Shown here: positions 24,174 to 64,000 of the stretch, in pieces | Numbering within the stretch: position 1 is the stretch's first letter | Layout of the letters: every line of letters begins with the position of its first letter | Origin: Schmidtea nova | Taxonomy: Eukaryota | Length of the DNA stretch: 64,000 nt | Assembly: GCA_044892505.1 (NCBI GenBank) | Contig: CM097883.1 | Location: forward strand, 216,380,001 to 216,444,000 | Direction: 5' to 3' | Translations under genes and position numbers: made by a program | Notes under the pieces: model-generated | Told to the model about the DNA's origin: nothing | What the model saw: only the letters and a program-made list of their open reading frames with translations | Databases searched by the model: none

Positions 24174-24885
24174 TGTGAGACCGTGAGGCCCCACAACGAC
24201 GACTCGGACTCCCTCGCCGCGTGAGCAGCATAGGAAGTATAGCTATATGCATTAAAATGTCAATATAAAAAAAAAATAAAATAACGTTTACATATAAAAT
24301 TTTAATTGAATAAAAATCATGGGTACATCATATAAGACAAAATAAAGAAATTACTTCCGTACTTGAATGTGTGGTTCCTTGTATGAAATTCGGTTTTTTC
24401 AAAAAATCTCGTTTTGTTCAATGAAATATTACTTAAATCAAAGTTTAGTCTTGATTGTAAGTTAAAAGTAAAACGTCTGTTGTTGTGATTTTTGGATCGG
24501 TATTTATACTGATCCGTCTGGTTGGATTGACCAATCAGGATCAGGCCGTCCTTCAAAGTATTTTTATTATTTTATTCTAACCTAAACATTATTTTGTTTC
24601 CTTTTCCGGTTTCTCGCTGGGTAGTCCTGGTTTTCCAAGTAATTAATTAATTATTTGCACTATTATTTTATTTAATTCTATCTTTTCTTATTTCAGGCCC
24701 CCTTTTGCTGTTGTTTACCGGTTTATTTTCAAAATTTCCTTTTACTGAAAATTTATCAAATATTATTTGTCGTTTTATTGTTATTTTTAATTTGTTTTTC
24801 TTGTTATTTTTATGTTTATTATTTTCTTATTGTTTTGTGTTTTTGCTCTTTTATTGTGTTTTTAGGTGATTTGGCGGGCCCAACA
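24174..24885 (-). repeat. Putative 3' LTR (~712 bp) of the giant retroelement
   Basis: On the minus strand it begins TGTTGGG and ends GGTCTCACA. Contains ATTGG (24531-24535), TATAAATA (24508-24501) and ATTAAA (24306-24301) followed by a T-rich tract. A G-rich PPT-like tract precedes it at 24902-24886. The second LTR is outside the window, so the boundaries are unconfirmed. Confidence 0.45.
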
Positions 24886-25089
24886 TCACCCGGGGACCCC
24901 TAAAATTGCGTCCCGCAATTAATTATACATAAATACTTATATTCATCATACATAAAAAGTTTTATGGAATTATACACGCAAAGAAAAATCACGTAAGGTG
25001 ATCGAATTTATACTTATCATAAAGTTTGTCAATAAATAGTCAAAAATGTAATGATTTGTCACAATAGTTCGATAAGTTTATCATAATGT

Positions 25090-25659
25090 TTATACAATTT
25101 GCTCGATCGTCTGGCTCGCTTGGGGTTGAGTTCGGGTCCTCTCGTTGATTATTTGTAGCTCGTAGTGGGTTTGGATGTGGTTGAGGTGGCTCCTTATTCG
25201 TCTTTGAGCTCGGTTATCTCGTCTGGAGGTTTGGTTGTAGATTTTCTGCTTTTGTTTTAGGATCTTTATTCTATATGAGGCAATTAGGATTGTGATTGCG
25301 ATGATAGTTGTGCTGATTGCTAGGATTATGATGATTGCTATGATCCATTTTTCTTGATATTCTATTTCAGCTTGGGATAGGCTTTTTATGGGCTCTCTAC
25401 CTTCTTTCAGGATTTTTCGGGTTTCTTTTAATTTCAGTTGTTGGTTACCGAAGATTTGTTGGATTTGATGATCTTGATTGTAGGGGTATTTCTGTCGGAA
25501 TTCGTTGATTTCTTTAATTACTTCTTCGATTAGGCTGTCTACTTTCTGGTAGATTTTGTCGGGTAGAACTCGTAATTGGGTTTCGGTTAGTTGTAGATCT
25601 TCTCTCTGTAGGGTAATGGTTGTTAACCATAGGAGTGTTGCTATTGCGAGCTTTCTCAT
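25090..25659 (-). CDS. Type I membrane protein (~189 aa), last accessory gene of the retroelement
   Basis: Signal-like MRKLAIATLLWLTTITL from ATG 25659 (the ORF-track start at 25692 is GTG); TM WIIAIIIILAISTTIIAITILIASY followed by basic residues. Confidence 0.7.
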   Translation of the reverse strand: MRKLAIATLLWLTTITLQREDLQLTETQLRVLPDKIYQKVDSLIEEVIKEINEFRQKYPYNQDHQIQQIFGNQQLKLKETRKILKEGREPIKSLSQAEIEYQEKWIIAIIIILAISTTIIAITILIASYRIKILKQKQKIYNQTSRRDNRAQRRIRSHLNHIQTHYELQIINERTRTQPQASQTIEQIV

Positions 25660-25734
25660 CTCTTTTATACATCGGTCAATACAGCTTGACACTTTTTATT
25701 TTACATAATTTATTTACACTTGGTTTCCGCACAT

Positions 25735-26796
25735 TTATACAAGGGTTTCGTTGGGTTCGTGAAAACCTTCGTCTTGAGGTTCCACCTGATTTATGGGGAG
25801 TGGCATCCATATTACCGTGCTCCTCCACATTTCGACTTCTTCTCGGTATGTGTGGGATATCTGGATCTCTTCATCTAATAAGTATTCCAGATAGTTCGCT
25901 TGTTCTGTTAGGGTTTCAATTTGTTTTTCTAGTTCTGCCAATTTTTTCTCTCTCTCTTCCTTCTCCATCATTTCGGTCACTGCTGCTGTGATACTTGTTT
26001 CTTTTATTGGTGTTGGTTTTTCTGCCAACTTCTTTCTCAGTTCTTCGTTTTCTTTTGTCAAATTTGTTATGTTCTCTTCATAACTCTGCCTCGTTTCTTC
26101 CAGTCTTTCTTTAGTTCTTTTTAATTCTATTTTCTTCTGGGTGATCACTCCTTGATATCCATTTATGTCTCTTTTCATGTTTTCTTCCTTGTGATTCCAC
26201 ATTCCGGTCAGCATACCTTTTAATTGTTCTTGATTGGCTAAATCTTTTCCCATTCTTTGTACTTGATAAGTTAATTCTTTTATTTTCTTGGCTTGTTCTC
26301 TGATAAATTGTTGTCTTTTCTTACTCCATACTTTATTTGACGCTTCTTGACTGATCTTTTGCCCTAATTCCTCTTTTAATTCATCGATCTCTTTAAACAG
26401 TTTCCAATCATCGCTGTACGCTGTTCGTTCTATTATCTCCCTTGCTTCCTTGTAAGAGTCTTTTGCCTCTTTCTTCCAATATCTTGCTTGTTCTGTGATT
26501 GACTGAATCTTATGGTCTGTTTTTATTTGTTGTCTATCCCTATCCTCTCGTCGCTCTTTCATCATCTCTTTGTAGTATTCGTTTTGTTGTCTTAGCAGTT
26601 TGTAGACTTCTTCTATTTTTTCTCGACTTCTTTGATTTGTTTTCTCGGCTTCTCTTAGTGCTTGGGTTTGTCTTTCCAATTCCTCCTGTTTTCGATAATA
26701 GACATGAATCCATATCCCAGTCCGCTCCATGTGATTTCTGATCATTTCGTCTTGATGTACTGTTACTTCTTGTAAGGTTACTTCTATATTTCCCAT
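25735..26796 (-). CDS. 353-aa long coiled-coil accessory protein
   Basis: Intact ORF rich in E/K/Q/R; starts MGNIEV; AATTATAG-AA-ATG context. Confidence 0.75.
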   Translation of the reverse strand: MGNIEVTLQEVTVHQDEMIRNHMERTGIWIHVYYRKQEELERQTQALREAEKTNQRSREKIEEVYKLLRQQNEYYKEMMKERREDRDRQQIKTDHKIQSITEQARYWKKEAKDSYKEAREIIERTAYSDDWKLFKEIDELKEELGQKISQEASNKVWSKKRQQFIREQAKKIKELTYQVQRMGKDLANQEQLKGMLTGMWNHKEENMKRDINGYQGVITQKKIELKRTKERLEETRQSYEENITNLTKENEELRKKLAEKPTPIKETSITAAVTEMMEKEEREKKLAELEKQIETLTEQANYLEYLLDEEIQISHTYREEVEMWRSTVIWMPLPINQVEPQDEGFHEPNETLV

Positions 26797-26909: not shown

Positions 26910-28286
26910 TTACGCCAACCATCCTTTTCTGTCTGTTTTCTCATGCCTCTCCATCTCTATGTATAGCGTGTCTGCATATAGTCGCTCCCATAGGTTTTCT
27001 TTCCTTATAAACATTGGTTCTCCTGCTGCTAGTCCGCATTCTGTTGTTGGTTTTTCGCTCGTACTCGTATGTTTGTCTGTTTCAAAGAACTTTTCTACTG
27101 GTTTTCCCATACTTTTGATTCTTATAATGACTCCTACTTTCAAGGGCCATTCTATTAGGTCATCGTATTCTCCTTTACATAGCGAGAAAAATATTGACAC
27201 GTGTGTTCCTTGTCCTCTTCCGTCTCCATTTGGGTATACTTTCAATCTTATTTTAACCCCGTTTTTCCATAAATAAAATGGTGGGCTTATTACTGCTGTT
27301 TTAGTCATATTTCTGGCTTCTGCTAGTTTGTCTCTGAAATCTGTTATTTTCCATAAGTAAGGTGCGATTGGTAAGTCCCTTCTTTCGTCAATTTCTCGTA
27401 TTAATTGATTATATTGTATTTTCATTCCTTTTCCTAATTCTTCTATGGCTATTATTTTCTTTTCCATTCTTTCGCGAGTTAGTTCAAACTGCTCTCTTGT
27501 TTCTAGTAGTAAACTCATCATTATCTTATGTGATTCTACTTCTTTTTCTAATTTCTGGATTGTCTGTTCCGTTTCTTTTGTCGTTTCGTTTGTCATTTCC
27601 ACATGCGTTAGTGCTGCTTCTTCTAGGTGTTGTTTCATTGATTGCCGCGTCCGCTTTTCTTTGCATCCCTGTTTGTTATATGGACATTCTCTTGGTCTTT
27701 CGGTACATACTTTCCAATGTTCATGTAACTTTACTTCTTCTGTTATTTCGCAATTGTTTGGACAGTTACTTACATATTGTCTGCATACTTTCTCCTCTGT
27801 TATATTCAAGTGTTCCTCTTCGATTTTTCTCCTCGTTTCTCGAGTTTCACAATACTCGCATGCGATTTCTTCTTCTTTACATTCTTCCTTGTGTTGTTCT
27901 CTCTTCTTTAGAGTTATTGTCTGTTGGCATTTCTCGCATTCGGCTCTCTTTTCCTCGCATTTTTCCATATGGTTCTCCAGATTACTTATTTGTCCTTGCC
28001 ATGTACAAGGTGTATTTACGCACTCCGTTGTGGTGCTCATAATTTCTCTTTGGGTTGCTTTGTCCGTTCTGGTTTCGTCCAACACTATTCTTCCTTCCTT
28101 ACATTCTGGGCATGTTGTTATTCCTGTTGCATCTAATTCTTGTATACATTTTGTACATATTCTACATCCACATATCGTTTGTCTGGGTTCTCGTAGTAAA
28201 TTATTACATTTCCCGCAGGTGAGCCTCTTGCTCCATTTTCTGTTTTCTAGTCTCAAAATTTCGATTATTCGTTCTTCTCTGTCCAT
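26910..28286 (-). CDS. Intronless TRAF-family protein (RING, TRAF zinc fingers, coiled coil, MATH); most like the TRAF2/3/5 type
   Basis: RING CGKC...CGCRICTKC...CPEC; zinc fingers such as CTWQGQISNLENHMEKC and HWKVCTERPRECPYNKQGC; MATH YLWKITDF...SPPFY...YPNGDGRGQGTHVSIFF...GEYDDLIEWP. Confidence 0.92.
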   Translation of the reverse strand: MDREERIIEILRLENRKWSKRLTCGKCNNLLREPRQTICGCRICTKCIQELDATGITTCPECKEGRIVLDETRTDKATQREIMSTTTECVNTPCTWQGQISNLENHMEKCEEKRAECEKCQQTITLKKREQHKEECKEEEIACEYCETRETRRKIEEEHLNITEEKVCRQYVSNCPNNCEITEEVKLHEHWKVCTERPRECPYNKQGCKEKRTRQSMKQHLEEAALTHVEMTNETTKETEQTIQKLEKEVESHKIMMSLLLETREQFELTRERMEKKIIAIEELGKGMKIQYNQLIREIDERRDLPIAPYLWKITDFRDKLAEARNMTKTAVISPPFYLWKNGVKIRLKVYPNGDGRGQGTHVSIFFSLCKGEYDDLIEWPLKVGVIIRIKSMGKPVEKFFETDKHTSTSEKPTTECGLAAGEPMFIRKENLWERLYADTLYIEMERHEKTDRKGWLA

Positions 28287-28379: not shown

Positions 28380-28736
28380 CTATGGCTCATTCGTTGAATC
28401 TGGTTCCGCTTCGTTGTTTAGTCTATTTATTACCCAACTCATCCATCCTTCTTCGGATTCTTCTCTTTCTCCTCGTGTTAAATGGTTTATTTCTATTGCT
28501 TGTCTTTGATTGATATTGCTTATATTTTGATTTTCTCTGGTGAGCTCGGTTATCACTCTTTGTTGTTCTTCTATTCTGTGTAATTGTTCGAAACAGTTGT
28601 TATAACTTTCTGATAATAACATTTGTCTTTCCGCTAATTGGTTCTGTAATGAGTTGACTGTTCGTACTAATAAATCACATTGTGCCTTCCATCTCATAGC
28701 CATAGTTATTTCAGTTGTTTCGTCTTGTTCGTTCAT
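28380..28736 (-). CDS. 118-aa coiled-coil accessory protein
   Basis: Intact ORF between pol and TRAF; AATTTAG-AAA-ATG context. Confidence 0.7.
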   Translation of the reverse strand: MNEQDETTEITMAMRWKAQCDLLVRTVNSLQNQLAERQMLLSESYNNCFEQLHRIEEQQRVITELTRENQNISNINQRQAIEINHLTRGEREESEEGWMSWVINRLNNEAEPDSTNEP

Positions 28737-28860: not shown

Positions 28861-31800
28861 CTATACCATCATTATCGTCTTTTCCTCGTATCGTTCTTCA
28901 TCTTCTATTTGTTTCCAGAATTCTTTACCTTTCGTTCTTCTTTGGAGTTCTTGCTGTATCTCTTCTGGTATTTCTATTCTTTGCTTCATAATTTTAATAT
29001 CTGGCCATTGTATGGCTGTCGCTTTGTTTCTCTTTCTGTATCTCCCATATATTATCATGCTTGTCGTCATTATCCCATATGCTATTAATATTCCTATACT
29101 GATTAATCCTATTACTGTTTTTCCACGGTTTGTTGCTTTGATTTTATTCTGATTCGCTTTTATCTCATTTTGGGTTTGAGCCTCTGGCTTCTTCTCCTTC
29201 TGTACTTGATTCTTGACTTTGTTCATTACTTCTTGTGTAGACCAATGGCGATTTAGTAGTTGTTTGACGTTATTTTCTTTTGTTCGGTTTTCCACGTTTC
29301 CTGGTTCGATCTGTTGTTGTAGTTTCTCTGAGATCTGATATAATCCGCATTCTGGTTTTTCTGAACCTTTTCTAGTGAAGGTACATATCGCGTATGTCTT
29401 ATTTACTTCCATTTTCTTTAATTCGACTTTTTCCTTATTCCCTGTTTCTTTACAGTGGGTTAGGTTGCCTTCTTCTCCTTCTGGGTTATGCTTTGTCCAA
29501 CATATTCCTTTCACTGTTTGATCGAGTCCTGTTAATGTCAGAGTTCTTTCTGTTTTGGTTAACTCTTCTTCGTCGAATTTCAGTATTTCTCCTTTTTGAA
29601 ATGTCTTACAATGCTCTATTCCCTCTTGGATTCCTTTCTCCCAGATACATATACTTCCTTCTTCATTCATTTGTATTTCTTGTATTTCGATTTCCTTGTT
29701 TGTTTGTGATTCGTCGCTTGTCTGAACTTGGTATTCCTTCCTTGGTTCGTTGTATGTTCCCCAGCATAGTTTGTTGCTGCTTGTTTTTCTTATTGTTATG
29801 GCCATTTGTTCTATTATTATTCCTCTGTCAAAACGTTTGGACATTGCTATTATTAACGCTATGCATACGCACTCTTGTTGGGGTGATGTTCTTTCTCTCG
29901 TGTTATTGGTGCTTTTCTCCCCTTCTCCTGGTTTATCCGTTGTGTTTCTTATCTGAGTTGCTGGTTGATCTATGGTGTTTTTGATTTCTTTCTTTGTTGG
30001 TTTTACTCTATACCATTCGAGTCTAGGCGTTTCGTATTTTTGACATACGACTGTCTTAGGTAGCCCCGACTTCTTTTCCTTTCCTATTATGCATATCCGA
30101 TGCATGATTCCTCTGTCCATCCCTTCTATTCGTACTATATCCTGGTCGGATTTTCTGATTATACATTTTAGTGGGTTATCTTTCCCAATTGGTTCATCCT
30201 CTCTATTCCAGCATATTTTCTCGACCTCCTGGACATTTACTATTTTTATCCCTGCTTGTAGGTTTGTTGCTTCTTCCCTATTGATTAACGTTAGTATTAT
30301 TGTTAGACCCAACCATTTTGAACTCTGCGGTAGGCTTCTGGTTCGCCTTTCATATTTTTTCTCTTCTCCTTTAATCTCTTTTATTTCCTTGTCTTCGTTG
30401 TTTATTCCTAGTTTTCCGCTTTTTGTTTCTTTCTTATTTGTTTCTTCTCGTGCTTTTTCTTCTAGTATTTCTACTCCATGGCTTGTATTATCTATATTTA
30501 GCCATTGGGTTGTTGATTTTCTTGGGTTTATCTTGCGTATCCATATAGCTGATAACGCGATTATTACTGGTATGGTCGCTGTTAATATTCCTAAGCCAAT
30601 TAGTTCTTTAATTTCTTTATTCTCGTCTGTTTGTATAGATTCGCTTTGGTTGAACATTATTCCGTATTGTCCCTTTAGTTTTCTCATTAATTGTTCTCGT
30701 TCCTCTTGTTTTCTTTTGACTTCTTTGATAACTTCTTCAGGTGTCCATTTTGCTTGAGGATCGGTTATTATTTTTTCTGCGTCCATTTGTTCATTCGTTT
30801 GGCTTAGTTCCTTGAATTCGAGTTTCCTTGCTACTCCTTTTGATGTCGCGTTTGCTGGTGTATAGTAGGTTTCGCATCTTTCTTGTTGGTTTCCTAGTGT
30901 GTTCATTTTTTCTATTGTACATACTTCATACTCGCTATTAAATTGTAGTTTTTCGATCCTGATTTCTTTATTTGTTTTTCTGCACTCTCTTGATTGTCTT
31001 CTTATATGTTTCTGGACTATTATCCAACATATTTCCAATGTTTTATTCTCTATTTTCCATAATGTTAGAGTTGCTGATGTCTTTCTCTCGGGTTTTGTCG
31101 TAACTTCCTGGCTTATTGGTTGTTTATTGCTTTTAAAGGTAGTGGTGTACTTCGGTTTTCCTTTGTTTCGTTGTTTCCTTTTATTTTTCCGTGTTAACGT
31201 TTTGGTTCTTGTTCCGGATGAAGTCGTATGTATTCCGCATTCTAGGTCGTTTATCGTTATCTGATCATTTTTCTTTACCAAACATATTTCGTAGGTTTGT
31301 TTACTTTCTAAACCTTTTATTTGAATCGTCGTTGTTCCTGTGTTTGTTCGACATTGTGGTGTCGTTCTTTTATTTACTTCTTTTTCGTACTTCCTCCAGC
31401 ATACTCCTTTCACATTTGGTTCTATCTCTTTTATTTCTAATGTTATGTTTACTTTCCGCTTGATTTGTTTATTTCTCTTCCTCGTTCTCCTTCGGAACTT
31501 TATTACCTCTCCAGGTTGGAATGTTTTACATTTTGTGGTACCTTTCTTGTTCCTCTCTTTCTCAAGTAGGCATAGTTTGTACATCTTGTCTGCTCTTACT
31601 TCGGATACTTTAATTACTTTGTTTGTTGTTGGCTTTCGACTTTTCCTTATTTCGTTTACGCCGATTTCTTCGTCATTCCTCGCCCAACATTTTATGTTAG
31701 TGTTCTGTGTATCTTCCACTTCTGTTATTGTCATAGTTTCAATTTCTATTCCTTCCTCTAATCGTTTTATTATTATTAGTATGAGTGCTAAGCATAATAC

Positions 31801-36241: not shown

Positions 36242-36258
36242 TCTTCCCTTGTTGTTTA

Positions 36259-36295
<37 letters not shown>

Positions 36296-36299
36296 TTAT

Positions 36300-36902: not shown

Positions 36903-36967
36903 TTTAAATAAATACAAAATAAAATAAAAAACTAAATTTGTTCATAGTAAAATTTATTAAATAACAA

Positions 36968-37384: not shown

Positions 37385-37927
37385 TTTTATAAATTGTGAC
37401 AAATTTGTAGAAATGACTTTGTATTTATAGTGAGGACTGGATGCCTTTGTCCAATCACAATCATGCATTTGTATTGCACACGTTATACATGTCTTTGTTG
37501 TAAGTGTGTGTGTGTTGTATATGTTCAAGTAATAAGCTTTTGCATATAAAAACCATAACAAAAGATGTACTGATAGTAAGGGTCTGTAAGTGGATAAAAT
37601 ATTTATTTATATCACAATAATTTATTTTACAATAATTTTTTTTATAAAAAATACTATTTTTAACCTTGGTAAATAAAAAGTTTAATAATTACTCAAAGTT
37701 AAAATAATTAATTAAATTCATAATAATAATTTAAAGTTAAATAAAAAATTATTAATAACTATTACTAAAAACTATTAAAAAACTAAAACTATTTCTTAAA
37801 AAACTGTTACTTAAAAAACTAAAAAACTAATACTAAAAACTAATAAAAACTAAAACTGAAACTAAAAACATTTATTAATATGAAAAACCTAAAAAATCAC
37901 TGTTTACAAATACACACAAATTGATAA

Positions 37928-39848: not shown

Positions 39849-39868
39849 ATATATTTACAGTAGTAATC

Positions 39869-40405: not shown

Positions 40406-40408
40406 ACA

Positions 40409-55960: not shown

Positions 55961-58900
55961 GCGTCGGCTGGATTCTTTTCGATGTATTGTGGTGCTTGGT
56001 TCTTATACACTTGTCCTCCCTTATAGTCGTCATCGTCATCATCGTCGTCACTCGAATCATTTTGGGTTTTATATCCTTTCATCCTCTCCCATAAACCTTT
56101 TCTTTCTCTCTTGAGCTGTTGTCTTGCTTGTTCGTCATTCATTATCTTTTTAAATTTTCGTCCTACTTCTTCATCTGTTCCCTTCATTTTTGCGAGTATC
56201 TTCAACAATCTCTTTATTCGATGTATGTCCTTTGAGTGTCCGTGCAACACCATCGTTTTCGCAAGGAATGGTAAAAACCCTACTACCATTTTCCAATTCA
56301 CTTTCTTTTCTCTCTTGTAGATGTCAAAACACGCGAGCATTTGCGTTATTATCACTCTGACGATTTGTATTATTAATATAACCCCCAGTATTCCAGCCAT
56401 CATTTGTCCGAATATCAGAAATCTTCCCCACATTGCTTTCATCATATTTTCTGTGGCTTTCTTGAAATGTGCTGGTGACAACAACAGCTCATAATTCGGT
56501 CCTTCTCGATAATTCGTTCCTCCCGTTATCGTTACGATATTTGACAGTAATGCTTCTCTTCTCGCTGGAAATAATATATTCTGCCTTGCTGCTTCTAAAT
56601 CCTTTGGACTATATATTCCGTTGTTTGAGACATCTACGTCGCTGAATTGCCTATCCTTTGACAACTGCATTAATTCGAATTCTCTTGGTGCTATCACTTC
56701 GGATCTTCCTGGGAACATAACCCATTTACCATCTGGTTTCTGATAAAGCGGTCCATACGCATTACTACAGTTGAATGGATTTGGTTCAAACCCTGGTGGA
56801 TTGATGATTCTCGTCACCGGTTGAACGTATCGTACTTTTCCTTTGTAGTCGATTTCTAACTCATTTGTACAGGTTCCAGGTTTCAACTGCGTTGTTGCTG
56901 CTAGCGACGCGTGTGTCTTTTCGCAAATGTATACGTACATTGCTTCTCCAACCACTCTTCCGAAATGTCCTTCTCTCAGTGGTAATAATGGCATCGCGCT
57001 ATCTGGATTCGTAATCGCTACGGCCAACTTCGTCTTTAATATTTCTCGATTCAGTATACAATCATTATTTATCAGATCGTAGTACACTTTTTGTAATGAG
57101 GCTTGTCCTCTATGGAATAGGAAATCCATTTTATTATTCACATACAAGTGTAGTTTGATATCCATTGTGTCGATTTTGGGTTTCGCATTCGGCACTTCTT
57201 GTTTTGACACATATATTCCTGGGTAATTCGTTTCGTATACCGTTGTACTACACTTAAGGGTTGCTTTCCCTTTTATGAACCTCATTCCCACATCCTGATT
57301 TGTGGTTATCAACACTGTTGGTGTGGCTCTCATCTCTATCCGTTTTTCTCTATGATCTGGTTTCAGTTGTCTTTTATTCTCTAAAGCTTCCTTGAGATGC
57401 TTTGCTCTAGCTTTGTCGTCATCGTCTTCTTCCTGGAACGTTTTTCCTTGAATTTCGTCGAACTGTGCTCCTTGTAGCAGTTGTAATTGACATTCGTTCA
57501 CCTTTGGTTTGTATACTAATGTTGACATTCCCGTTTGACACATGCTCCTGTCGATTTTACACATGGATAACGTTTTCATTTCTCCCGTTGTTGGTTCGAA
57601 GAATGCTTCGTAGCTTTTTAGTTCGACTATATACGTATCCATCACCACTAAGTTGGTTGCGGGTACTCCGAATATCGGGTAGGTTTCTCCATGACAATAT
57701 CCTTCTCCTCCCGTAATCCGTCCTGCTACATAGTATGTCTGTTGCAGCATCATTCCTGGCTTTCCTCTTATCTTGATTTTATCTCTTGTTGTTACTTCTC
57801 CATGTTTAAACAGTGCTTCGCAGTCTTCTCCTTGTAACATGATTGGTTCTCTTTCCGTTCCTGGCATGACAATTGCTGAATAATGTCCTCTCCCGCAGTA
57901 GAATGCGAATCTCGTCTTCTGCACTTTACATTCATTCACCATTGTCTTTATGAGTTCTGCTTCTTGATACACGTGGTACCATTGTTCCTTTTTAATCTTT
58001 TGCAACTCTACTGGAGTTGCATCTTTGCATTGCTCCGTACCTCTCAATGAATACTTTTCTCCTAACTTCATTTGGTCGCAATCAAACACTTCGAATGCTG
58101 TTGCGCTATCGGTGCTAATCATCCATATCAACATCATCATTATTATAGAGCTCAAATTCATTGATGACTTCGCGTTTCCTGTTCCTGCTTGTTCTTTTTC
58201 TAACTCTTCTAATATTTTTTCGAATTTCTTTTTCATATTCTTGGCTTGCGTTTTCTTCTGGTTAGTTTTTATAAATGTTTCCCATCCTCCTTTGTTAATG
58301 ACGTATGGTTCTATTTCTCTGGCTATAATTTTTGCGGTATTTTTTATATGTCTCTCTAATGCAGTGGGTTTTGGTCGACCTCTACTCAGTGTCAACAGAT
58401 TGTAGATCGTGTATGCAATGGCTATTACGTATTTATTATCAGTTTCCGCTCCTTCTGTCAATTTCTTTATTAACGTGGTGGTTCCTTGCCAGTCTAGATG
58501 ATTTGACTTCGTCTTTTCTTTTATGAATTCCGGTAAGATGGGTGCGATTGCGCTGTGTAGTGACTTCGCCTTTTCGCTTATTTCAGTTATCCGCCAGTAT
58601 TTTCTCAATTCCGGATCAATTATTGCCAATATTTCCATTATTGTTTTCGATATCCATTCCTCCCCTTGACATATTGGTGTTGTCTCTTTTTCTTTCATCT
58701 CCGCAATTTTATTTAGTTTCCTTAGGCATAATTCCCATTGATCTTGTCTCTTTTCATCTTTATTTCTTATAACTACAGTTGCTGGATCTGTCTTAGGTCT
58801 ACCTCGAGGTCGTCTATCCATTCCTGTACCTGTTTCCACAAACCTTGTTGCCCGTCCGGTTTCTTCCGTGACATCTCTTGGTTCGTTAGCTCTTTCCTCT

Positions 58901-61900
58901 AACCATCTTTCCATTTCTTGTGTTAATTGTATATTTTCGACATTCGCTCCTCTCGTTTCGTCTTCTGTCAAATCGTTTACTTCTTCTATTATTATTTCTT
59001 CTTCGACTTCTGTTTCTCCGGTGTTGGTTACTTGTATTGTCGTAGGTAGTTCTTGTATTCTTTCGAAAATGTTATCGTCTTTTTCCTTTGTTAATTCGGT
59101 TAGCTCTTCTATCATATCGTCGCTATCCGTCAAAATTTCGTCTACGTCGTATGGTTGTGGTGGAGTCATTTCTCTATTCCCTCTGGATGTTGTCTCAGAT
59201 CGTCTTGAACTTGTCCCTGGCGTTAGTACTGATTTCATCGGGCTCGGCGTACTTATACTTCCGTGTGGTTTATGGTTTTCTTCTTTACGTTTCAATGGTT
59301 GCCCCGCTATTGCTTCCACTGTCAGGGTATTCATGAGATCTAGTTGTGCTGGCGTTATTCCAATTTCCAAACTGTTATCTAATGATCGTCCTTGGTGTTG
59401 TAAATGGAATGGTGGTTCGTATCTCAATTTCTTTTTAATATCTCGAATTTTTTCTGCTATTCCAACCCACAATTCCTCCTTATCCTTGTTTGGGTATATT
59501 ATTCTTAAATGTACCTTTTGTGGAATTTCTTGCGAGAATTCTTGATTTCTCCATTTCCTGATTACGTGGTCTAGTTGTTCCGGGCACCACTCGTTAACTC
59601 TTTTATATTCCGCGATTGCTTTTGCTACTTTACGCAAGCATGTTATATCCTCCCCATTTACCACGAAAAAATCTGCGAGACCCTTTATTACTTTTCTCTT
59701 ACCGTGCGCATTAGTTTTTAATATTTCGACAAATTCTTCCGTTTTTTGCTTTTCCCTTTCTAGCCACATAGCCGCGGTTTCTGGTCCATCTAGGTCTATT
59801 GGCGTAGCTTTCCTTGTCACCATGCAAACTCTTCCTATCTCTGGTTCGCAGTCATCTTCAATTCCTCTTTTATATTCTTCTTCATATTCCCCTTCTTTTG
59901 GTTCCCAACATTTTCCTTTCTCGTTCCATTGTTTTTCTACGGGTGTTTGTATTCGTCTGTTGAGATTGAGTTCTTCTAATACGTTTTCCCACTCTGGCCA
60001 ACTTCGCCAATTTCGATAAATTTCTACTATTTGTTGTAATTTACGCACAACTTTTTTCCGTCGTTCCCGTTCTCTTTTCTCGTCTTTAGCAGTTTCTCTG
60101 GGTGTATCGTTCATTCTGCTAACGTGGATGGTTTGGTGATTATCCCATATACCGATTTTGTATAGTCGTCTCTCATCGTGATCCCATAATACATGTTCGT
60201 TGTATTGTATGATTATGTCGTCTTCCCATTCGTCTTCTGGTTCTCTTTGCACTAGTGTCTCGTTAATGACATTTATTAATTCTTTAATGGTGCAATCCGC
60301 TACCACTTCAATTTCTTTGGTGTCTTCATTAGTCAATTCTACTGAAATTTTTAGATCCGTTATTTGCCCTTGTCTAAACATTGTTTTTCCCATTTTTGCG
60401 ATTAATTTGTCGTGTGAGATCTGTGACCATCTCGTGTGGCTTGTGTCACGTATGCACTCAATACATCGTTTCAATTTCTCGTATTCGCTTCTCATTAACT
60501 CTTTTCTATGTTTTTTGACTTGTGGTATGATTTGTTCTATCAGGGAATTTAGATTCTTTCGTAAGACTCGTTCTTTCTCGTATTCTAACCGTGGTTTTAT
60601 TCTCCTTTCGAAGCACGTGTTTGCTTCCCTTGCAACTTCTTGTAGGTTCTCTTCTTCCTTTTCATCACATATTGATAACAGGGTTATTTCTCCTGGCCAT
60701 ATACCTGTTTCTACTAAGTGCGTTCTTTTCTTTACGAGTCTATTCTGCGAATAGATGAATTTGTTTTTATATGAGCTCCCTAGCCTGTTCTCTACCCATC
60801 TGTAGATATCGTCTGTAAATGGAGTTTTAATCCAGATTCTTGGTGTAGATGTATTTATTATTATTGAGATGGTGTAATTGAGGAGTGGTTCCTCTATTAA
60901 TTTCCCTACGTATCGATTCAACATGTCTACTTCCCGGTCTTGTAACCATTCTTTGTAGTTCATTTGTAATAATGCTTTCATGAATTTCCGGTATTGTTTC
61001 TTATCCATGAACTCTTCGTTATATATTACTTCTAGCGAGTTATCTAGTAATTTCTGGATTTCATCTACTTTTATCTGTGTAGGTTCTGAGGTCTTTACTA
61101 CTTTTCTCTCTTTATTTTCGTCTTCGGATTCGTTTAATATGTCTCCTGCTAGGCTACTGATGTCACTATCTTCTTCCTCATCGGAAAACTCTCTGGTGGT
61201 ATTTCTTAACATATTAATATGTGCTATTTGGTTCGTTTTCCCTTGTATATTCTCCGTTGGTTTTGTTTTGTTTTTTCTGATTTCTGGTGTTAGTTCATTT
61301 TTGTCCTCTATTACTTCGACTTTTTCCATTTTCTTTCCCAACTCGTCTATCTCTTTTAAACGTCTTCTTATCATTTTTCCTTCAAATATTCGCCTGATTC
61401 GGGTTTCGTGACGTATTGGTGGTGGAATTTCTTCTGGTTCTATTTCTTTAATAATCATCACGTTTCTTTTTGTTTCTACTACTCCCAAGTTTTCCCATAT
61501 GTCCGTTAATTCCAACTTTACTTTTGGCGCACCTTCTATTTGTAGGAACGCTTCTCTGGGCAGTTTCGTTACTCCTGGGACCATCTGGTTTACTTTGTTG
61601 AATAATATTCCCACTTCTTCTTTTACGTTATACTGGAATCTAAACACGGATTTGTTGGGCATGATTACCATCATTCCTCTTTTCCAAATCTCCTTTCCTT
61701 CTTCCTGGTTTATCTCGGTTTCCACTTCCTTTTTTGTTTCTTTTTCTACTTCTTCATCTTTTTGTACTATCTCTTTTCGACTTTCGTTGTCGGCTGGATT
61801 TGGGTCTATCGAATTTATTTCCGGTGTGGTTTCTTTCTCGTGGTTATCTGTTTGCTTTATTGCTCTCATCATGTTAATTCTTATAGGTTGTCGTTCTCTT

Positions 61901-63669
61901 TCTTTCTGTTTTTGTTCATCCTCTCTTTGTATTCTTGCCCATTCCTGAGCATGTCGTGCTTGACTTTCTCGATTCAATCGTTCGTTTTCGCTTTCTATTT
62001 TTCTCATCATGTTAATTTGCTGTTGATTGATTTGCGGATTTCCTCTCGTCGTATTGTTTATAAGTTCCGTCAACCTTTGAACTTCTTGCATCAAATGTAT
62101 TTCTTTGGTGGTGGTTTTGTTCTGACTATTGTTATTATTGACTTGTTGGTTCCCATAATCTGGTCGGTTTACGGTATTTGTTTGATTTCCGTAATTTGGT
62201 CGGCTCCCATTACTCTGCCAGTTTCCTCGCTGATTACTTTTTTGTCCGCAATTTCTTGAATAGTGACCAGGTCGTCCGCAATTAAAACAGATTATTGTAG
62301 AACATCTGCTTTCCGAGTGTCCTTTAACTCCACATTTTCCGCAATTCAAATTTTGATAGCATTCTTGCTGCCAGTGTCCCAACTTCCCGCATGTTTTACA
62401 TTGTTTTGTTTGTCTTTGAGGGTTGTAATTGTTTTGGTTTTCAAAGTTCTGCACTTTATTTCCTTCATTCCTTCGTTGAGGGGGTGGTCGGTTTAATTGT
62501 TGCGAATTTGGAATGTGATTGTTGAGATTTACCTCTGGTTCGGTTTGTGCTGTGTCCATGGCTAAATAAATTCTGCCCTCACTTCCTATCATATGCAATT
62601 CGAATCTGTTAGCTGTTTCTAACGCTTGATCAATGGTCTTGCATCCTTGGCATCCAACTTGCGCTCTTATGTCGGGTCTTCTTAATCCTCCTATGAAGAT
62701 GGCTGCCATTAACTCCTCGTTTATTGGACCTCCATCCTTGAATACCGATTTTGCTAATTTTTTCAGTTCACTTGCGTATACCGCATTAGATTCATTCATC
62801 TTTTGTTTCCTCATTGAAAATTCTATGAATGCCTCGCTTAGCACTTTATTTATTCCAAATGTTTGTTGGAAAAAATCCTTTATCGCTGTCCAGCTTGTAG
62901 GTGGATTGGTACCATTTTTCGCTTCCAAATATAGGTCCAATGCACTATCTTTCAAATATAACTGAATTCTGCTTACTGTTGTTTCCGCTTTCCACTTGCA
63001 TACTTCTACGAATATGCCAAATTCTTTTAAAAAGGTTTCTAATTTACTCGCATCTCCGTTAAACGGTTCTCCTGAAAATTTATCCTTTATTTCTTCTCTT
63101 GGTTCACCCATTTCAATTCCGCTGTCTTGAGTTATTTTACTTTCGTTTCCTCTTGTTTCTAGTTCGTTGTTATGTTCGTCTTCTGTTTCACTCGAGCTTG
63201 AATCGCTTTCTGTTTCTCTTATTACTTCGTTATCCGATTTTATACTTTCGTTATCACTCTCGTTGATTTCTATCTCTGGTTCTACCTCGTTTTCTACTTC
63301 TTCGATATTATCGTTGTTAGTTTCGTCGATCTCTCCTTCTTGTTCTATCTCGTGTTCTATTTCTTCGATATTATCGTTGTTAGTTTCGTCGCTTTCTATT
63401 TCACTTGTTTGGTTCTCCTTGGGTTCCGCTTGGTTTTCTTTGTTACTTGAGCTGTTGCTTACTATTGACAATTTATCGTTTTCGATAATCGATTTATCTC
63501 TTATTATTCTCCTCGCTTTACTCCCTTGTGGGTTCTTGTTGTTATCTTTGCCGGCTTTCTGCTTTTTTGTTGTTTTTGTTGTTGTACTAATTTTGTCTTT
63601 TTTGTTAATATTGCTGCCGACTTCCTTTTCCGTTGGCTTTACTACGACAATCTTTGCTCCTTTTCTCAA
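55885..63669 (-). CDS. ORF1 polyprotein (2594 aa): Gag, accessory domains and envelope glycoprotein
   Basis: Capsid-like region from MGEP (63111; FNGD...LETFL...LYLKDSALDLY); three CX2CX4HX4C knuckles at 62401-62248; signal-like MNLSSIIMMMLIWMIS then AFEVFDC; Cys-rich ectodomain and TM at ~56425-56330. No ATG at the ORF 5' end. Confidence 0.9.
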   Translation of the reverse strand: MRKGAKIVVVKPTEKEVGSNINKKDKISTTTKTTKKQKAGKDNNKNPQGSKARRIIRDKSIIENDKLSIVSNSSSNKENQAEPKENQTSEIESDETNNDNIEEIEHEIEQEGEIDETNNDNIEEVENEVEPEIEINESDNESIKSDNEVIRETESDSSSSETEDEHNNELETRGNESKITQDSGIEMGEPREEIKDKFSGEPFNGDASKLETFLKEFGIFVEVCKWKAETTVSRIQLYLKDSALDLYLEAKNGTNPPTSWTAIKDFFQQTFGINKVLSEAFIEFSMRKQKMNESNAVYASELKKLAKSVFKDGGPINEELMAAIFIGGLRRPDIRAQVGCQGCKTIDQALETANRFELHMIGSEGRIYLAMDTAQTEPEVNLNNHIPNSQQLNRPPPQRRNEGNKVQNFENQNNYNPQRQTKQCKTCGKLGHWQQECYQNLNCGKCGVKGHSESRCSTIICFNCGRPGHYSRNCGQKSNQRGNWQSNGSRPNYGNQTNTVNRPDYGNQQVNNNNSQNKTTTKEIHLMQEVQRLTELINNTTRGNPQINQQQINMMRKIESENERLNRESQARHAQEWARIQREDEQKQKERERQPIRINMMRAIKQTDNHEKETTPEINSIDPNPADNESRKEIVQKDEEVEKETKKEVETEINQEEGKEIWKRGMMVIMPNKSVFRFQYNVKEEVGILFNKVNQMVPGVTKLPREAFLQIEGAPKVKLELTDIWENLGVVETKRNVMIIKEIEPEEIPPPIRHETRIRRIFEGKMIRRRLKEIDELGKKMEKVEVIEDKNELTPEIRKNKTKPTENIQGKTNQIAHINMLRNTTREFSDEEEDSDISSLAGDILNESEDENKERKVVKTSEPTQIKVDEIQKLLDNSLEVIYNEEFMDKKQYRKFMKALLQMNYKEWLQDREVDMLNRYVGKLIEEPLLNYTISIIINTSTPRIWIKTPFTDDIYRWVENRLGSSYKNKFIYSQNRLVKKRTHLVETGIWPGEITLLSICDEKEEENLQEVAREANTCFERRIKPRLEYEKERVLRKNLNSLIEQIIPQVKKHRKELMRSEYEKLKRCIECIRDTSHTRWSQISHDKLIAKMGKTMFRQGQITDLKISVELTNEDTKEIEVVADCTIKELINVINETLVQREPEDEWEDDIIIQYNEHVLWDHDERRLYKIGIWDNHQTIHVSRMNDTPRETAKDEKRERERRKKVVRKLQQIVEIYRNWRSWPEWENVLEELNLNRRIQTPVEKQWNEKGKCWEPKEGEYEEEYKRGIEDDCEPEIGRVCMVTRKATPIDLDGPETAAMWLEREKQKTEEFVEILKTNAHGKRKVIKGLADFFVVNGEDITCLRKVAKAIAEYKRVNEWCPEQLDHVIRKWRNQEFSQEIPQKVHLRIIYPNKDKEELWVGIAEKIRDIKKKLRYEPPFHLQHQGRSLDNSLEIGITPAQLDLMNTLTVEAIAGQPLKRKEENHKPHGSISTPSPMKSVLTPGTSSRRSETTSRGNREMTPPQPYDVDEILTDSDDMIEELTELTKEKDDNIFERIQELPTTIQVTNTGETEVEEEIIIEEVNDLTEDETRGANVENIQLTQEMERWLEERANEPRDVTEETGRATRFVETGTGMDRRPRGRPKTDPATVVIRNKDEKRQDQWELCLRKLNKIAEMKEKETTPICQGEEWISKTIMEILAIIDPELRKYWRITEISEKAKSLHSAIAPILPEFIKEKTKSNHLDWQGTTTLIKKLTEGAETDNKYVIAIAYTIYNLLTLSRGRPKPTALERHIKNTAKIIAREIEPYVINKGGWETFIKTNQKKTQAKNMKKKFEKILEELEKEQAGTGNAKSSMNLSSIIMMMLIWMISTDSATAFEVFDCDQMKLGEKYSLRGTEQCKDATPVELQKIKKEQWYHVYQEAELIKTMVNECKVQKTRFAFYCGRGHYSAIVMPGTEREPIMLQGEDCEALFKHGEVTTRDKIKIRGKPGMMLQQTYYVAGRITGGEGYCHGETYPIFGVPATNLVVMDTYIVELKSYEAFFEPTTGEMKTLSMCKIDRSMCQTGMSTLVYKPKVNECQLQLLQGAQFDEIQGKTFQEEDDDDKARAKHLKEALENKRQLKPDHREKRIEMRATPTVLITTNQDVGMRFIKGKATLKCSTTVYETNYPGIYVSKQEVPNAKPKIDTMDIKLHLYVNNKMDFLFHRGQASLQKVYYDLINNDCILNREILKTKLAVAITNPDSAMPLLPLREGHFGRVVGEAMYVYICEKTHASLAATTQLKPGTCTNELEIDYKGKVRYVQPVTRIINPPGFEPNPFNCSNAYGPLYQKPDGKWVMFPGRSEVIAPREFELMQLSKDRQFSDVDVSNNGIYSPKDLEAARQNILFPARREALLSNIVTITGGTNYREGPNYELLLSPAHFKKATENMMKAMWGRFLIFGQMMAGILGVILIIQIVRVIITQMLACFDIYKREKKVNWKMVVGFLPFLAKTMVLHGHSKDIHRIKRLLKILAKMKGTDEEVGRKFKKIMNDEQARQQLKRERKGLWERMKGYKTQNDSSDDDDDDDDYKGGQVYKNQAPQYIEKNPADAWKCYAPPPTMYQEPLQGGKIAQCK

Positions 63670-64000
63670 GGGGATTACTTTTGTATTCTCAATTTTCTTG
63701 TCCTATCTCTTATCGTATTCTGATTCTTCTTGCTTGATTGATTGATTTGATTGATTTGTATATTTAAAATACAAAGGTCCTCAACGATACATTATTGTTA
63801 TCGTCGCGCTTTTATTCCCTTTCTTTCGGGATTACTTATTACTGGGTTTTCATTATTTCCCCATTCCCAGATTCTCCTTTATTTTTAGTCTATTTAAATT
63901 ATCTATAGACTGGTCACAATTATCTATTTATGTCGTAATAATTATCTATACTTTATAAATCAATTACTTTTCCCACAGTTGCCCAATTTATTGGTCGCTC

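What the first reader, a model, noticed from the sequence alone, without database searches (positions are those of the whole stretch)
24174..64000. Giant enveloped gypsy-like retroelement carrying a cell-death and immune-signalling toolkit
Seen: one strand-coherent element over 22 kb with a 2594-aa ORF1, a Pol of 3104 aa once the Maverick and a 1-nt deletion are repaired (9315 nt, an exact codon multiple), and four further genes. Recognised by motif: Gag/CCHC, PR-RT-RH-IN, an envelope glycoprotein, TRAF and ankyrin repeats; less certainly ubiquitin-like, Bcl-2-like and FN3-like domains. Established: ordinary Ty3/gypsy elements are about 5-10 kb with gag, pol and sometimes a 3' env, while Bcl-2, ankyrin and TRAF-pathway modulators are typical of large DNA viruses. 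From memory, the nearest precedent is the giant planarian Burro elements; I cannot verify any relationship. Inference: an infectious or recently infectious retrovirus-like lineage that manipulates host apoptosis and innate signalling.
Basis: partly seen in the sequence, partly recalled or inferred. Interest (0 to 1): 0.96.

Follow-up and report, generated by a model that had tools for sequence, protein, structure and literature searches.

The report
Burro-like giant enveloped retroelement copy
This is a real, very large retrovirus-like element of the Burro type already described in planarian flatworms, carrying an envelope gene, a Bcl-2-like domain, a TRAF gene and ankyrin repeats; this copy is broken by a nested Maverick transposon, so it is striking but belongs to a known kind.

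Summary
On the minus strand, 24174-35136 and 52917-64000 are two halves of one Ty3/gypsy-type retroelement (about 22 kb in the window; its 5' end lies beyond 64000). They are split by a young 17.8-kb Maverick. The N gap lies inside the Maverick. An identical 6-bp flanking duplication, and alignment of both pol flanks to adjacent stretches of one integrase in five relatives, show that the halves belong together.

Confirmed with tools: Gag with three CCHC knuckles, a class III (mononegavirus-G-like) envelope protein in frame with Gag, PR-RT-RH-IN closest to Ty3, two ankyrin blocks and a full-length TRAF. A Bcl-2 fold sits just upstream of Env. Weak or generic: the ubiquitin-like segments, and "FN3-like", which is a generic beta-sandwich repeat. 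BIR and dUTPase were not found.

This architecture matches published Burro/GYPSM1 planarian elements and flatworm GAG-ENV-POL errantiviruses, so it is a new member of a known kind. Its Env is at most 39% identical, over its length, to anything in 1.84 billion cluster representatives.

Pol is broken twice (one frameshift, one insertion). Host manipulation is inferred, not shown.

New here: a conserved Bcl-2-like, hydrophobic segment, Env arrangement, and an orphan two-module repeat extension of Pol.

The parts
24174..24885 (-). Putative 3' LTR (712 nt, TG..CA ends, TATA-like motif)
   Evidence: Read directly. The A-rich sense composition ends here. There is no second copy in the window, so the bounds are unverified.
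25090..25692 (-). 200-codon ORF, small membrane protein (hydrophobic segment at aa 113-142), no family
25735..26796 (-). 353-codon ORF, coiled-coil-like (weak SMC/Rad50/filament matches only)
26910..28286 (-). Full-length TRAF gene: RING and zinc fingers, coiled coil, TRAF-C/MATH
   Evidence: Pfam MATH_2 E 1.3e-21 and zf-TRAF E 3.1e-7. PDB: TRAF3/5/2 TRAF-C E 1e-23, and TRAF6 RING-ZF E 2e-13 on aa 21-147.
28380..28736 (-). 118-codon ORF, coiled-coil-like, no family
28861..56002 (-). pol (PR-RT-RH-IN plus a C-terminal extension of about 1,800 codons), given as one broken gene. It has two breaks: one frameshift and one nested Maverick insertion. There are no in-frame stops inside the pieces.
55484..55756 (-). 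Retroviral aspartyl protease domain
   Evidence: PF00077 E 9.1e-7
54344..54820 (-). Reverse transcriptase domain
   Evidence: PF00078 E 3.8e-37. Best solved relatives are Ty3 RT 4ol8 (E 8e-72) and Ty3 Gag-Pol 7q5b.
53769..54157 (-). RNase H domain
   Evidence: PF17917 and PF17919
53271..53444 (-). Integrase H2C2 zinc-binding domain; the rve core follows it
   Evidence: PF17921 E 3.2e-21, PF00665 E 5.6e-12
34000..34269 (-). Ankyrin repeat block 1 in the pol extension
   Evidence: Ank_2 E 1.5e-12 / 1.4e-14
33028..33285 (-). Ankyrin repeat block 2 in the pol extension
   Evidence: Ank_2 E 2.9e-5
30529..32304 (-). Repeat module A: hydrophobic leader, four ~95-aa Cys/Trp beta-sandwich repeats, an internal hydrophobic segment, a transmembrane segment
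29050..30348 (-). Repeat module B, paralogue of A (32% identity over 208 aa, E 5e-25): three repeats and a transmembrane segment
   Evidence: No homologue in the 5.8-billion-protein search.
35137..52916 (.). Nested Maverick/Polinton. TIRs 35137-36241 and 51834-52916 are 100% identical. It is flanked by an identical 6-bp duplication. The N gap 50985-51833 lies inside it.
   Evidence: rve core, chromodomain, Peptidase_C5, A32-like ATPase, pPolB homologue
55885..63669 (-). ORF1: Gag, accessory region and Env in one uninterrupted frame (2594 codons; the frame is open from 63702; first ATG at codon 187)
62680..62961 (-). Gag capsid-like region
   Evidence: Retrotrans_gag E 4.7e-4, below the curated cut-off. 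Similar to the gag of relatives.
62248..62400 (-). Three CCHC zinc knuckles
59284..61680 (-). Span holding four candidate ubiquitin-like (beta-grasp) segments: 61444-61680, 60664-60888, 60109-60360, 59284-59523
   Evidence: Weak only. Ubiquitin_4 E 0.038 for one segment. A profile of the four segments against PDB is not significant.
58252..58674 (-). Bcl-2-like domain (ORF1 aa 1666-1806) with a BH2-like GGW motif
   Evidence: Alignment A2. Profile against PDB: Bcl-xL/A1/BAX at E 0.016-0.09. AF2 pLDDT 71, pTM 0.69. All top 50 Foldseek PDB hits are Bcl-2 family, TM 0.5-0.7. Viral Bcl-2 homologues appear in BFVD.
55888..58155 (-). Env: signal-like hydrophobic segment (aa 1839-1854), class III fusion glycoprotein ectodomain, transmembrane segment (aa 2418-2448), ~145-aa tail
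   Evidence: PF24664 E 5.6e-71, hydropathy, 921 relatives

Best explanation
It is an integrated copy of a giant Ty3/gypsy-type, envelope-carrying LTR retroelement of the Burro / GAG-ENV-POL 'errantivirus' kind known from planarian flatworms. It sits next to a host SF3B3 gene. It is inactivated in pol by one frameshift and by a very recent Maverick insertion.

Shown:
- Gene order is Gag (three CCHC knuckles), a ~1,350-aa accessory region ending in a Bcl-2-fold domain, and a class III Env, all in one frame.
- Then comes PR-RT-RH-IN with a ~1,800-codon extension holding two ankyrin blocks and two paralogous repeat modules, each with a transmembrane segment.
- Then four small ORFs, including a complete TRAF, and then a putative LTR.

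Inferred mechanism:
- An LTR-driven genomic RNA is translated into giant polyproteins that thread the ER membrane.
- The hydrophobic segment after the Bcl-2-like domain acts as the Env signal sequence. After cleavage it would leave the Gag-accessory-Bcl-2 part membrane-anchored on the cytosolic side, like a tail-anchored Bcl-2.
- The Env ectodomain is lumenal, and its transmembrane segment returns the chain to the cytosol for PR-RT-RH-IN.
- The protease cuts out the units. Gag, RT and IN carry out ordinary retrotransposition, and the class III fusogen allows cell-to-cell or animal-to-animal passage.
- The Bcl-2-like, TRAF and ankyrin parts would keep the producing cell alive and dampen or redirect TNF-receptor/NF-kB-type signalling, as host-derived homologues do in large DNA viruses.
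For: One unit: (shared composition, TIRs, identical 6-bp flanks, pol flanks adjacent on one integrase in five relatives).

Ty3/gypsy: PR-RT-RH-IN order; best solved RT is Ty3 at E 8e-72.

Env: PF24664 E 5.6e-71.

Family architecture: relatives at 30-39% Env and 35-52% pol identity carry CCHC...Env in one ORF, or Env-PR-RT-RH-IN in one ORF. One has capsid-CCHC-Env-PR-RT-RH-IN in a single 2146-aa ORF.

Bcl-2 fold.

Conserved spacing: in four lineages a hydrophobic segment follows the GGW motif by 23-42 residues, and Env follows it.

TRAF. Ankyrin.

Literature: Burro/GYPSM1 has the same set of features, with env in frame between gag and pol (PMC6431247). GAG-ENV-POL with class III Env occurs in Platyhelminthes (PMC13524379). 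BURRO1 is transcribed and PIWI-controlled in planarians (PMC8532177).

Host: SF3B3 is 98-99% identical to one unnamed UniParc protein and 73% to named lophotrochozoan proteins, including flukes.
Against: - No Burro1-4/GYPSM1 sequence could be obtained, so membership rests on architecture and literature, not on a tree.
- The host species is not identified.
- BIR and dUTPase, reported for Burro1, were not detected.
- TRAF is a separate 3' ORF here, whereas in Burro1 it is inside ORF1.
- ORF1 and pol are in different frames (pol at -1) with no canonical slippery heptamer in the overlap. Burro1 and most relatives have one ORF, so this may be a third break.
- The accessory regions have no detectable similarity in the relatives fetched, apart from the pre-Env domain.
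- The 5' LTR and PBS lie outside the window.
- Each repeat module has an extra internal hydrophobic segment that complicates a simple topology.
- No expression or protein data exist for this element.
Confidence: 0.85

Rival explanations
1. The core retroelement is real, but the 3' block (the 118-, 458-, 353- and 200-codon ORFs) is not part of it. On this reading, TRAF and its neighbours are intronless host genes or remains of another element, and the LTR call at 24174-24885 is wrong.
For: None of these ORFs has a counterpart in the nine related loci. Only one LTR can be seen. The 13 nt after the LTR look like a primer-binding site, which is unexpected after a 3' LTR.
Against: The ORFs lie on the same strand, tightly packed and without introns, and share the same A-rich sense-strand skew as the rest. 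That skew stops at the putative LTR. MATH_TRAF_C is a published component of Burro elements, either inside ORF1 or as an accessory ORF. Relatives also carry varying extra ORFs after pol.
Confidence: 0.1
2. The span is an assembly mosaic: the scaffold joined two different loci through the N gap or through the identical Maverick TIRs, so the two halves never formed one element.
For: There is an N gap of estimated length inside the Maverick, next to a 100% identical TIR of over 1 kb. This is a classic place for misjoins.
Against: The same 6 bp flank the two outer TIR ends. In five relatives the upstream pol piece ends, and the downstream piece begins, on adjacent overlapping stretches of one integrase. 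Composition is the same in both halves. At most the join could link two equivalent copies.
Confidence: 0.04
3. The element is as described, but its Bcl-2-like, TRAF, ankyrin and repeat modules do not manipulate host death or immune signalling. They serve the element's own assembly, trafficking or membrane handling, or they are neutral passengers in a decaying copy.
For: There is no functional evidence at all. The Bcl-2-like domain is only 8-18% identical to solved family members, with a medium-confidence model. The accessory regions turn over quickly between relatives. This copy's pol is broken.
Against: Very long frames stay open despite about 6% stop-prone codons. The Bcl-2-like, hydrophobic segment, Env arrangement is kept in four lineages that are under 40% identical. 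The TRAF keeps all family domains.
Confidence: 0.25

Closest known systems
Burro1-4 / GYPSM1 giant gypsy-like LTR retrotransposons of planarians (Jurka 2007; Grohme et al. 2018; Arkhipova & Yushenova 2019, PMC6431247)
   Same: Internal region over 20 kb. Gag with three CCHC knuckles. Env in frame between gag and pol, with hits to mononegavirus glycoproteins. BCL2-like domain just before env. Ankyrin repeats, MATH/TRAF and coiled-coil ('Smc') motifs. AT-rich host.
   Different: Burro1 is one 4,873-aa gag-to-pol ORF with MATH_TRAF_C inside it, plus BIR and dUTPase. Here ORF1 and pol are in different frames, TRAF is a complete separate gene 3' of pol, and BIR and dUTPase are not detected. Pol carries a two-module repeat extension that the text read here does not mention. 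Sequence identity to Burro could not be measured.
GAG-ENV-POL 'errantiviruses' with gB-type class III Env in Nematoda, Bryozoa and Platyhelminthes (PMC13524379; Sacco et al. 2022, as cited there)
   Same: Ty3/gypsy pol, a class III fusogen placed before pol, and occurrence in flatworms. The compact relatives found here (for example a 2146-aa capsid-CCHC-Env-PR-RT-RH-IN ORF) fit this description.
   Different: Those elements are of ordinary size, with no reported cell-death or signalling domains. The present element adds more than 10 kb of accessory coding sequence.
Drosophila gypsy/ZAM-type errantiviruses (Metaviridae)
   Same: LTR retroelement of the Ty3/gypsy lineage with an envelope gene.
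   Different: Their env is an F-type (baculovirus F-like) gene placed 3' of pol and expressed from a spliced RNA. Their size is about 7-8 kb.
Viral Bcl-2 homologues and TRAF/ankyrin-based modulators of large DNA viruses (herpes-, pox-, adeno-, asfar- and iridoviruses)
   Same: The Bcl-2 fold is recovered by structure search, including viral members. The presumed logic is to keep the infected cell alive and steer signalling.
   Different: Here the domain is part of a retroelement polyprotein, and its membrane anchor appears to be shared with the Env signal sequence. Cellular Bcl-2 proteins match better than viral ones.
Maverick/Polinton elements (the nested insertion)
   Same: Long TIRs, a 6-bp duplication, a pPolB homologue, an rve integrase core, an adenovirus-type cysteine protease and an A32-like ATPase.
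   Different: It also encodes a TBP-like protein. Its TIRs are built from tandem arrays rich in TGACTCA/TGACGTCA motifs. Capsid genes were not recognised by Pfam.

Membership tests
Ty3/gypsy LTR retroelements (Metaviridae) | pol domain order PR-RT-RH-IN | tested here: met
   Pfam order RVP, RVT_1, RNase H, Integrase_H2C2, rve along the strand
Ty3/gypsy LTR retroelements (Metaviridae) | RT closest to Ty3/gypsy RTs | tested here: met
   Best solved relatives are Ty3 RT 4ol8 (E 8e-72) and Ty3 Gag-Pol 7q5b (E 1e-70), ahead of caulimovirus, foamy and gamma-retroviral RTs. No tree was built.
Ty3/gypsy LTR retroelements (Metaviridae) | Two LTRs, with a PBS after the 5' LTR and a PPT before the 3' LTR | tested here: inconclusive
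   Only one candidate LTR lies in the window. The 5' end is beyond 64000. No clear polypurine tract was seen.
Burro / GYPSM1 family | Giant internal region (well above 10 kb) | tested here: met
   About 22 kb of element sequence in the window, excluding the Maverick
Burro / GYPSM1 family | Gag with retrotrans_gag motif and CCHC knuckles at the N-terminus | tested here: met
   Three CCHC knuckles. Retrotrans_gag at E 4.7e-4, below the cut-off.
Burro / GYPSM1 family | Env in frame between gag and pol, related to mononegavirus fusion glycoproteins | tested here: met
   PF24664 E 5.6e-71 inside ORF1, downstream of the CCHC knuckles
Burro / GYPSM1 family | BCL2-like domain before env | tested here: met
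   Fold search and profile search. Pfam's own Bcl-2 model does not hit.
Burro / GYPSM1 family | MATH_TRAF_C and ankyrin repeats | tested here: met
   TRAF is a separate 3' ORF here.
Burro / GYPSM1 family | Ubi2/SUMO-like domain | tested here: inconclusive
   Four beta-grasp-like segments seen by eye. One gives Ubiquitin_4 at E 0.038. The profile against PDB is not significant.
Burro / GYPSM1 family | BIR domain, and dUTPase between PR and RT (reported for Burro1) | tested here: not met
   No Pfam match even at E up to 10 for the PR-RT spacer, and no BIR anywhere. Sequence search only.
Burro / GYPSM1 family | Single gag-env-pol ORF | tested here: not met
   Pol is in the -1 frame relative to ORF1, with an overlap and no canonical slippery heptamer. 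It cannot be decided whether this is native or a mutation.
Burro / GYPSM1 family | Sequence relatedness (RT/IN clade) to Burro1-4/GYPSM1 | not testable with these tools
   No Burro or Repbase sequence was available. The protein collections gave only unnamed relatives at 30-52% identity.
Burro / GYPSM1 family | Host in planarians (Dugesiidae) | tested here: inconclusive
   Host SF3B3 is 98-99% identical to an unnamed UniParc entry and 73% to named lophotrochozoans. The sequence is AT-rich.
Bcl-2 family | Helical-bundle Bcl-2 fold | tested here: met
   AF2 model with 8 helices, pLDDT 71. All top 50 PDB matches are Bcl-2 family, TM 0.5-0.7, probability 1.0, E 3e-3 to 2e-2.
Bcl-2 family | BH2-type motif (W..GGW) and a BH1-like stretch | tested here: met
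   GGW is invariant in four lineages. The profile hits the BH2 region of Bcl-xL at E 0.016, and BH1-BH2 of A1 at E 0.08.
Bcl-2 family | C-terminal hydrophobic anchor after BH2 | tested here: met
   A hydrophobic segment lies 23-42 residues after GGW in four lineages. It is also the Env signal-like segment.
Bcl-2 family | BH3-peptide binding / anti-apoptotic activity | not testable with these tools
   Functional property
TRAF family | N-terminal RING and TRAF zinc fingers, coiled coil, C-terminal TRAF-C (MATH) | tested here: met
   zf-TRAF and MATH. aa 21-147 match the TRAF6/5/2 RING-ZF structures, and aa 292-444 match TRAF3/5/2/1/4 TRAF-C.
Class III viral fusion glycoproteins (rhabdovirus G / chuvirus G type) | Sequence membership, plus type I layout (signal sequence, ectodomain, one transmembrane segment, tail) | tested here: met
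   PF24664 and hydropathy. The fold itself was not modelled.
Fibronectin type III domain | FN3 sequence profile or specific fold match | tested here: inconclusive
   fn3 E 0.056. The model is a 7-strand beta-sandwich, pLDDT 76. Matches are spread over Ole e 1, pilins, FN3 scaffolds and CnaB at TM 0.45-0.62.
Maverick/Polinton | TIRs, 6-bp duplication, pPolB, rve integrase, adenoviral-type protease, packaging ATPase | tested here: met
   Capsid genes were not identified.

The most novel reading that the evidence does not exclude
The element uses a flavivirus-like, membrane-threaded polyprotein strategy not described for retroelements. One hydrophobic segment serves both as the tail anchor of a Bcl-2-like survival domain and as the signal sequence of a class III Env, an arrangement conserved in at least four deeply diverged lineages. 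In addition, its Pol carries an orphan family of seven beta-sandwich repeats in two membrane-anchored modules, which would be extra surface or ER-lumenal proteins with no relative among 5.8 billion proteins.
Probability: 0.3. Interest if true: 0.7.

Novelty: new member of a known kind. Interest (0 to 1): 0.45.

Why it matters
Burro-type elements are the largest known LTR retroelements. They are major components of planarian genomes and are transcribed in differentiated tissues under PIWI control. This well-preserved copy gives a concrete, annotated example in which the cell-death claim is checked by fold, not by motif alone.

The copy has these features:
- Env in frame between gag and pol.
- A structurally supported Bcl-2-like domain placed directly before the Env signal segment.
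- A complete TRAF gene.
- A large orphan extension of Pol.

The analysis also shows that compact relatives with the same Gag-Env-Pol order, some with the Bcl-2-like domain, occur in several unrelated public assemblies.

It does not open a new category. The main features were published in 2007-2019 and 2026.

Tried and rejected
- Exact look-up of the TRAF protein in public assemblies found nothing.
- A word-indexed homologue search with the whole 2114-aa piece returned only integrase-end matches. The same search with repeat module B returned nothing.
- PDB sequence searches with Env, the Bcl-2-like piece alone, and the 841-aa middle of ORF1 gave nothing useful. One search failed through my own frame slip and was corrected.
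- NCBIfam gave nothing. Rfam gave no family in the window. No tRNA genes were found. The bacterial promoter/terminator scan is irrelevant here.
- My self-BLAST script for internal repeats printed nothing. The module duplication was then shown with protein comparison.
- The Grohme et al. 2018 paper could not be opened, and no supplements are held for the eLife paper.
- Tracing the host through run and assembly accessions in the literature failed.
- I considered that the LTR might be the 5' LTR of a second downstream element, because of the PBS-like 13-mer. I rejected this as unsupported: the downstream 4 kb has no gag, no A-rich skew and no similarity to the element's leader.

These imply where its frame changes.

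Full report
**1. What is there**

All long ORFs between about 25 kb and 64 kb lie on the minus strand, except in a central block. Reading that strand from 64000 downwards gives this order:
- a 2594-codon ORF1 (63669-55885);
- pol pieces with protease, RT, RNase H and integrase;
- a 17.8-kb block with the opposite gene layout;
- a 2114-codon ORF;
- ORFs of 118, 458, 353 and 200 codons;
- a 712-nt stretch with TG..CA ends.

The two outer blocks share an unusual sense-strand composition (A 43-46%, T 18-19%), and it stops at the putative LTR. With about 0.06 stop-prone codons per codon, frames of 2,000-2,600 codons are far beyond chance.

**2. The gap and contiguity**

The window has two N runs. 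The one in the finding (50985-51833) lies inside the central block, directly next to its right terminal inverted repeat.

The central block is a Maverick/Polinton:
- Its TIRs (35137-36241 and 51834-52916) are 100% complementary over at least 1,083 nt. The match stops only at the gap edge.
- It encodes an rve integrase core with a chromodomain ORF, an adenovirus-type cysteine protease and an A32-like ATPase.
- It encodes a protein-primed polymerase homologue, 63-68% identical to a neighbouring copy that hits PF03175.

The same 6 bp flank the two outer TIR ends.

I did not cut the insertion out. I compared the pol pieces apart with five related loci. In every one, the upstream piece ends and the downstream piece begins on adjacent, slightly overlapping stretches of a single integrase.

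So the two halves of the retroelement come from one target site, and the gap does not bear on that. Whether the Maverick interior is continuous across the gap remains unknown.

**3. Domain content, tested**

| Region | Result |
|---|---|
| ORF1, Gag | capsid-like region (weak) and three CCHC knuckles |
| ORF1, last ~750 residues | viral class III fusion glycoprotein, PF24664 E 5.6e-71 |
| ORF1, hydropathy | exactly two hydrophobic segments: a signal-like one before the ectodomain and a transmembrane one after it |
| Pol, RT | closest to Ty3 among solved structures, E 8e-72 |
| Pol extension | after the integrase the frame stays open ~1,800 more codons, with two ankyrin blocks |
| Pol extension | two paralogous modules, 32% identity, E 5e-25 |
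| 458-codon ORF | complete TRAF: RING and zinc fingers matching TRAF6/5/2 structures, zf-TRAF, coiled coil, TRAF-C matching TRAF3/5/2 at E 1e-23 |

The two paralogous modules are built from seven ~95-residue repeats with invariant Cys-Trp and Cys positions. Each module ends in a transmembrane segment.

**4. The less certain domains**

*Bcl-2-like.* Pfam and single-sequence PDB searches are silent. However, weak BLAST matches showed that several relatives share the domain just upstream of Env.
- An alignment of four lineages has an invariant GGW in a BH2-like context.
- Its profile hits Bcl-xL, A1 and BAX in the PDB at E 0.016-0.09.
- An AlphaFold model built on it is an eight-helix bundle (pLDDT 71, pTM 0.69).
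- All top 50 Foldseek matches in the PDB are Bcl-2 family members (TM 0.5-0.7), and viral Bcl-2 homologues lead in BFVD.

I take the Bcl-2 fold as supported.

*Ubiquitin-like.* Four segments look like beta-grasp domains by eye. One gives Ubiquitin_4 at E 0.038. A four-segment profile is not significant against the PDB. This is inconclusive.

*FN3-like.* A repeat unit models as a seven-strand beta-sandwich (pLDDT 76), but its matches are generic: Ole e 1, pilins, FN3 scaffolds and CnaB. Module B has no homologue in the 5.8-billion-protein search.

*BIR and dUTPase.* Neither was found.

**5. Relatives**

An exhaustive HMMER search with Env found 921 proteins.
- The best full-length matches (29-39% identical) are long polyproteins.
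- Behind them come ~650-residue proteins at 23-27%, one cluster of which a source names as a beetle genomic 'Glycoprotein'.

Their contigs come from three ENA metagenome assemblies and one NCBI assembly. They show the same order:
- CCHC...Env in one ORF;
- Env-PR-RT-RH-IN in one ORF;
- in one case capsid-CCHC-Env-PR-RT-RH-IN in a single 2146-residue ORF.

Some have other extra genes after pol (RNase_T) or ankyrin before PR.

Apart from the pre-Env domain and gag, the accessory regions of the window's element have no detectable counterpart in these loci.

**6. Comparison with what is known**

The review of giant transposons (PMC6431247) describes planarian Burro/GYPSM1 elements with these features:
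- an internal region up to 25 kb;
- Gag with CCHC knuckles;
- MATH_TRAF_C, Ubi2/SUMO-like, BCL2-like, BIR and ankyrin domains;
- dUTPase;
- env in frame between gag and pol, with hits to mononegavirus glycoproteins.

A 2026 survey reports GAG-ENV-POL errantiviruses with class III Env in Nematoda, Bryozoa and Platyhelminthes (PMC13524379).

The present element fits this kind closely. It differs from Burro1 as described in four ways: separate frames for ORF1 and pol; TRAF as a 3' gene; no BIR or dUTPase detected; and the repeat-module extension.

I could not obtain Burro sequences, so membership by phylogeny is untested.

The neighbouring host SF3B3 gene is 98-99% identical to one unnamed UniParc protein, and 73% to named lophotrochozoan proteins including flukes. 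This is compatible with a planarian but does not prove it.

**7. State of this copy**

- ORF1 has no stop or frameshift in 2594 codons. Its first ATG is codon 187, although the frame is clearly coding upstream (0 stops against 19-20 in the other frames).
- Pol is broken twice: one frameshift and one Maverick insertion.
- The ORF1/pol boundary is a -1 overlap without a canonical slippery heptamer. Most relatives and Burro1 have one ORF there, so it may be a third break or a lineage feature.
- The 5' LTR and PBS are outside the window.

The pieces sum to about 3,100 codons.

**8. How it most likely works**

Shown: the gene order, the domains and the membrane segments.

Inferred:
- Translation of membrane-threaded polyproteins.
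- The hydrophobic segment 23-42 residues after the BH2-like motif is conserved in four lineages. It would act as the Env signal sequence and, after cleavage, as the tail anchor of the Bcl-2-like domain. That is the position where cellular Bcl-2 proteins carry their anchor.
- Env would be lumenal, and Pol would return to the cytosol.
- Protease processing and ordinary reverse transcription and integration.
- The Bcl-2-like, TRAF and ankyrin parts would act on host survival and TNF-receptor/NF-kB-type signalling.

None of the host-directed functions is tested.

**9. Verdict**

This is a real, well-preserved but defective copy of a Burro-like giant enveloped retroelement. It is a new member of a known kind. 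Interest is moderate. The new points are the fold-level support for Bcl-2, the conserved Bcl-2/signal-segment/Env arrangement, and the orphan repeat modules.

Slip declared: two checkpoint notes hold pol ORF-piece bounds copied from the ORF listing.

Noticed in passing
window 38671-39138 (-), inside the Maverick: The Maverick encodes a TATA-binding-protein-like ORF (PF00352, E 7.8e-15), an unusual passenger for this kind of element.
   Followed up: no
window 35137-36241 and 51834-52916: The Maverick TIRs are built from tandem arrays of 13-, 23- and ~120-nt units packed with TGACTCA / TGACGTCA (AP-1/CRE-like) motifs.
   Followed up: no
window 12-2120, 4511-5018, 20199-20283: Further Maverick pieces. 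These are a pPolB ORF (PF03175, E 6.6e-32; 63-68% aa identity to the nested copy), a stretch like the end of the 406-codon ORF and the protease ORF of the nested copy, and a TIR end 82% identical to that of the nested copy. The locus is therefore a cluster of Mavericks.
   Followed up: partly
window 10296-16971 (-): Host splicing factor SF3B3 in three large exons, 98-99% identical to an unnamed UniParc protein. An N gap (13096-13303) and a 21-nt tandem array (11340-12116) lie in its intron.
   Followed up: partly
window 24161-24173 (-): The 13 nt immediately after the putative LTR end begin with TGG and look like a tRNA primer-binding site. This is expected after a 5' LTR, not a 3' LTR. No gag or matching leader follows.
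   Followed up: partly
window 63111-63702 (-): The ORF1 frame is open for 197 codons before its first ATG, with no ATG in any frame of that stretch. In this stretch the ORF1 frame has 0 stops, against 19-20 in the other two frames. The start of Gag may be supplied by splicing or a non-AUG start, or the start codon may be lost.
   Followed up: partly
window 20773-21267, 22213-22809, 22990-23469 (-): A RING-finger ORF (zf-C3HC4_3, E 1.9e-9) and two GC-rich ORFs without family lie between the Maverick TIR end and the LTR. Their origin is unknown.
   Followed up: no
L001 9547-11622; L009 16542-17882: Compact relatives of the element carry an RNase_T-type exonuclease ORF after pol, a different accessory gene from those in the window.
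   Followed up: no
window 46164-46502: A 43-nt tandem repeat array (about 8 copies, up to 99% identical) lies just upstream of the Maverick polymerase ORF.
   Followed up: no
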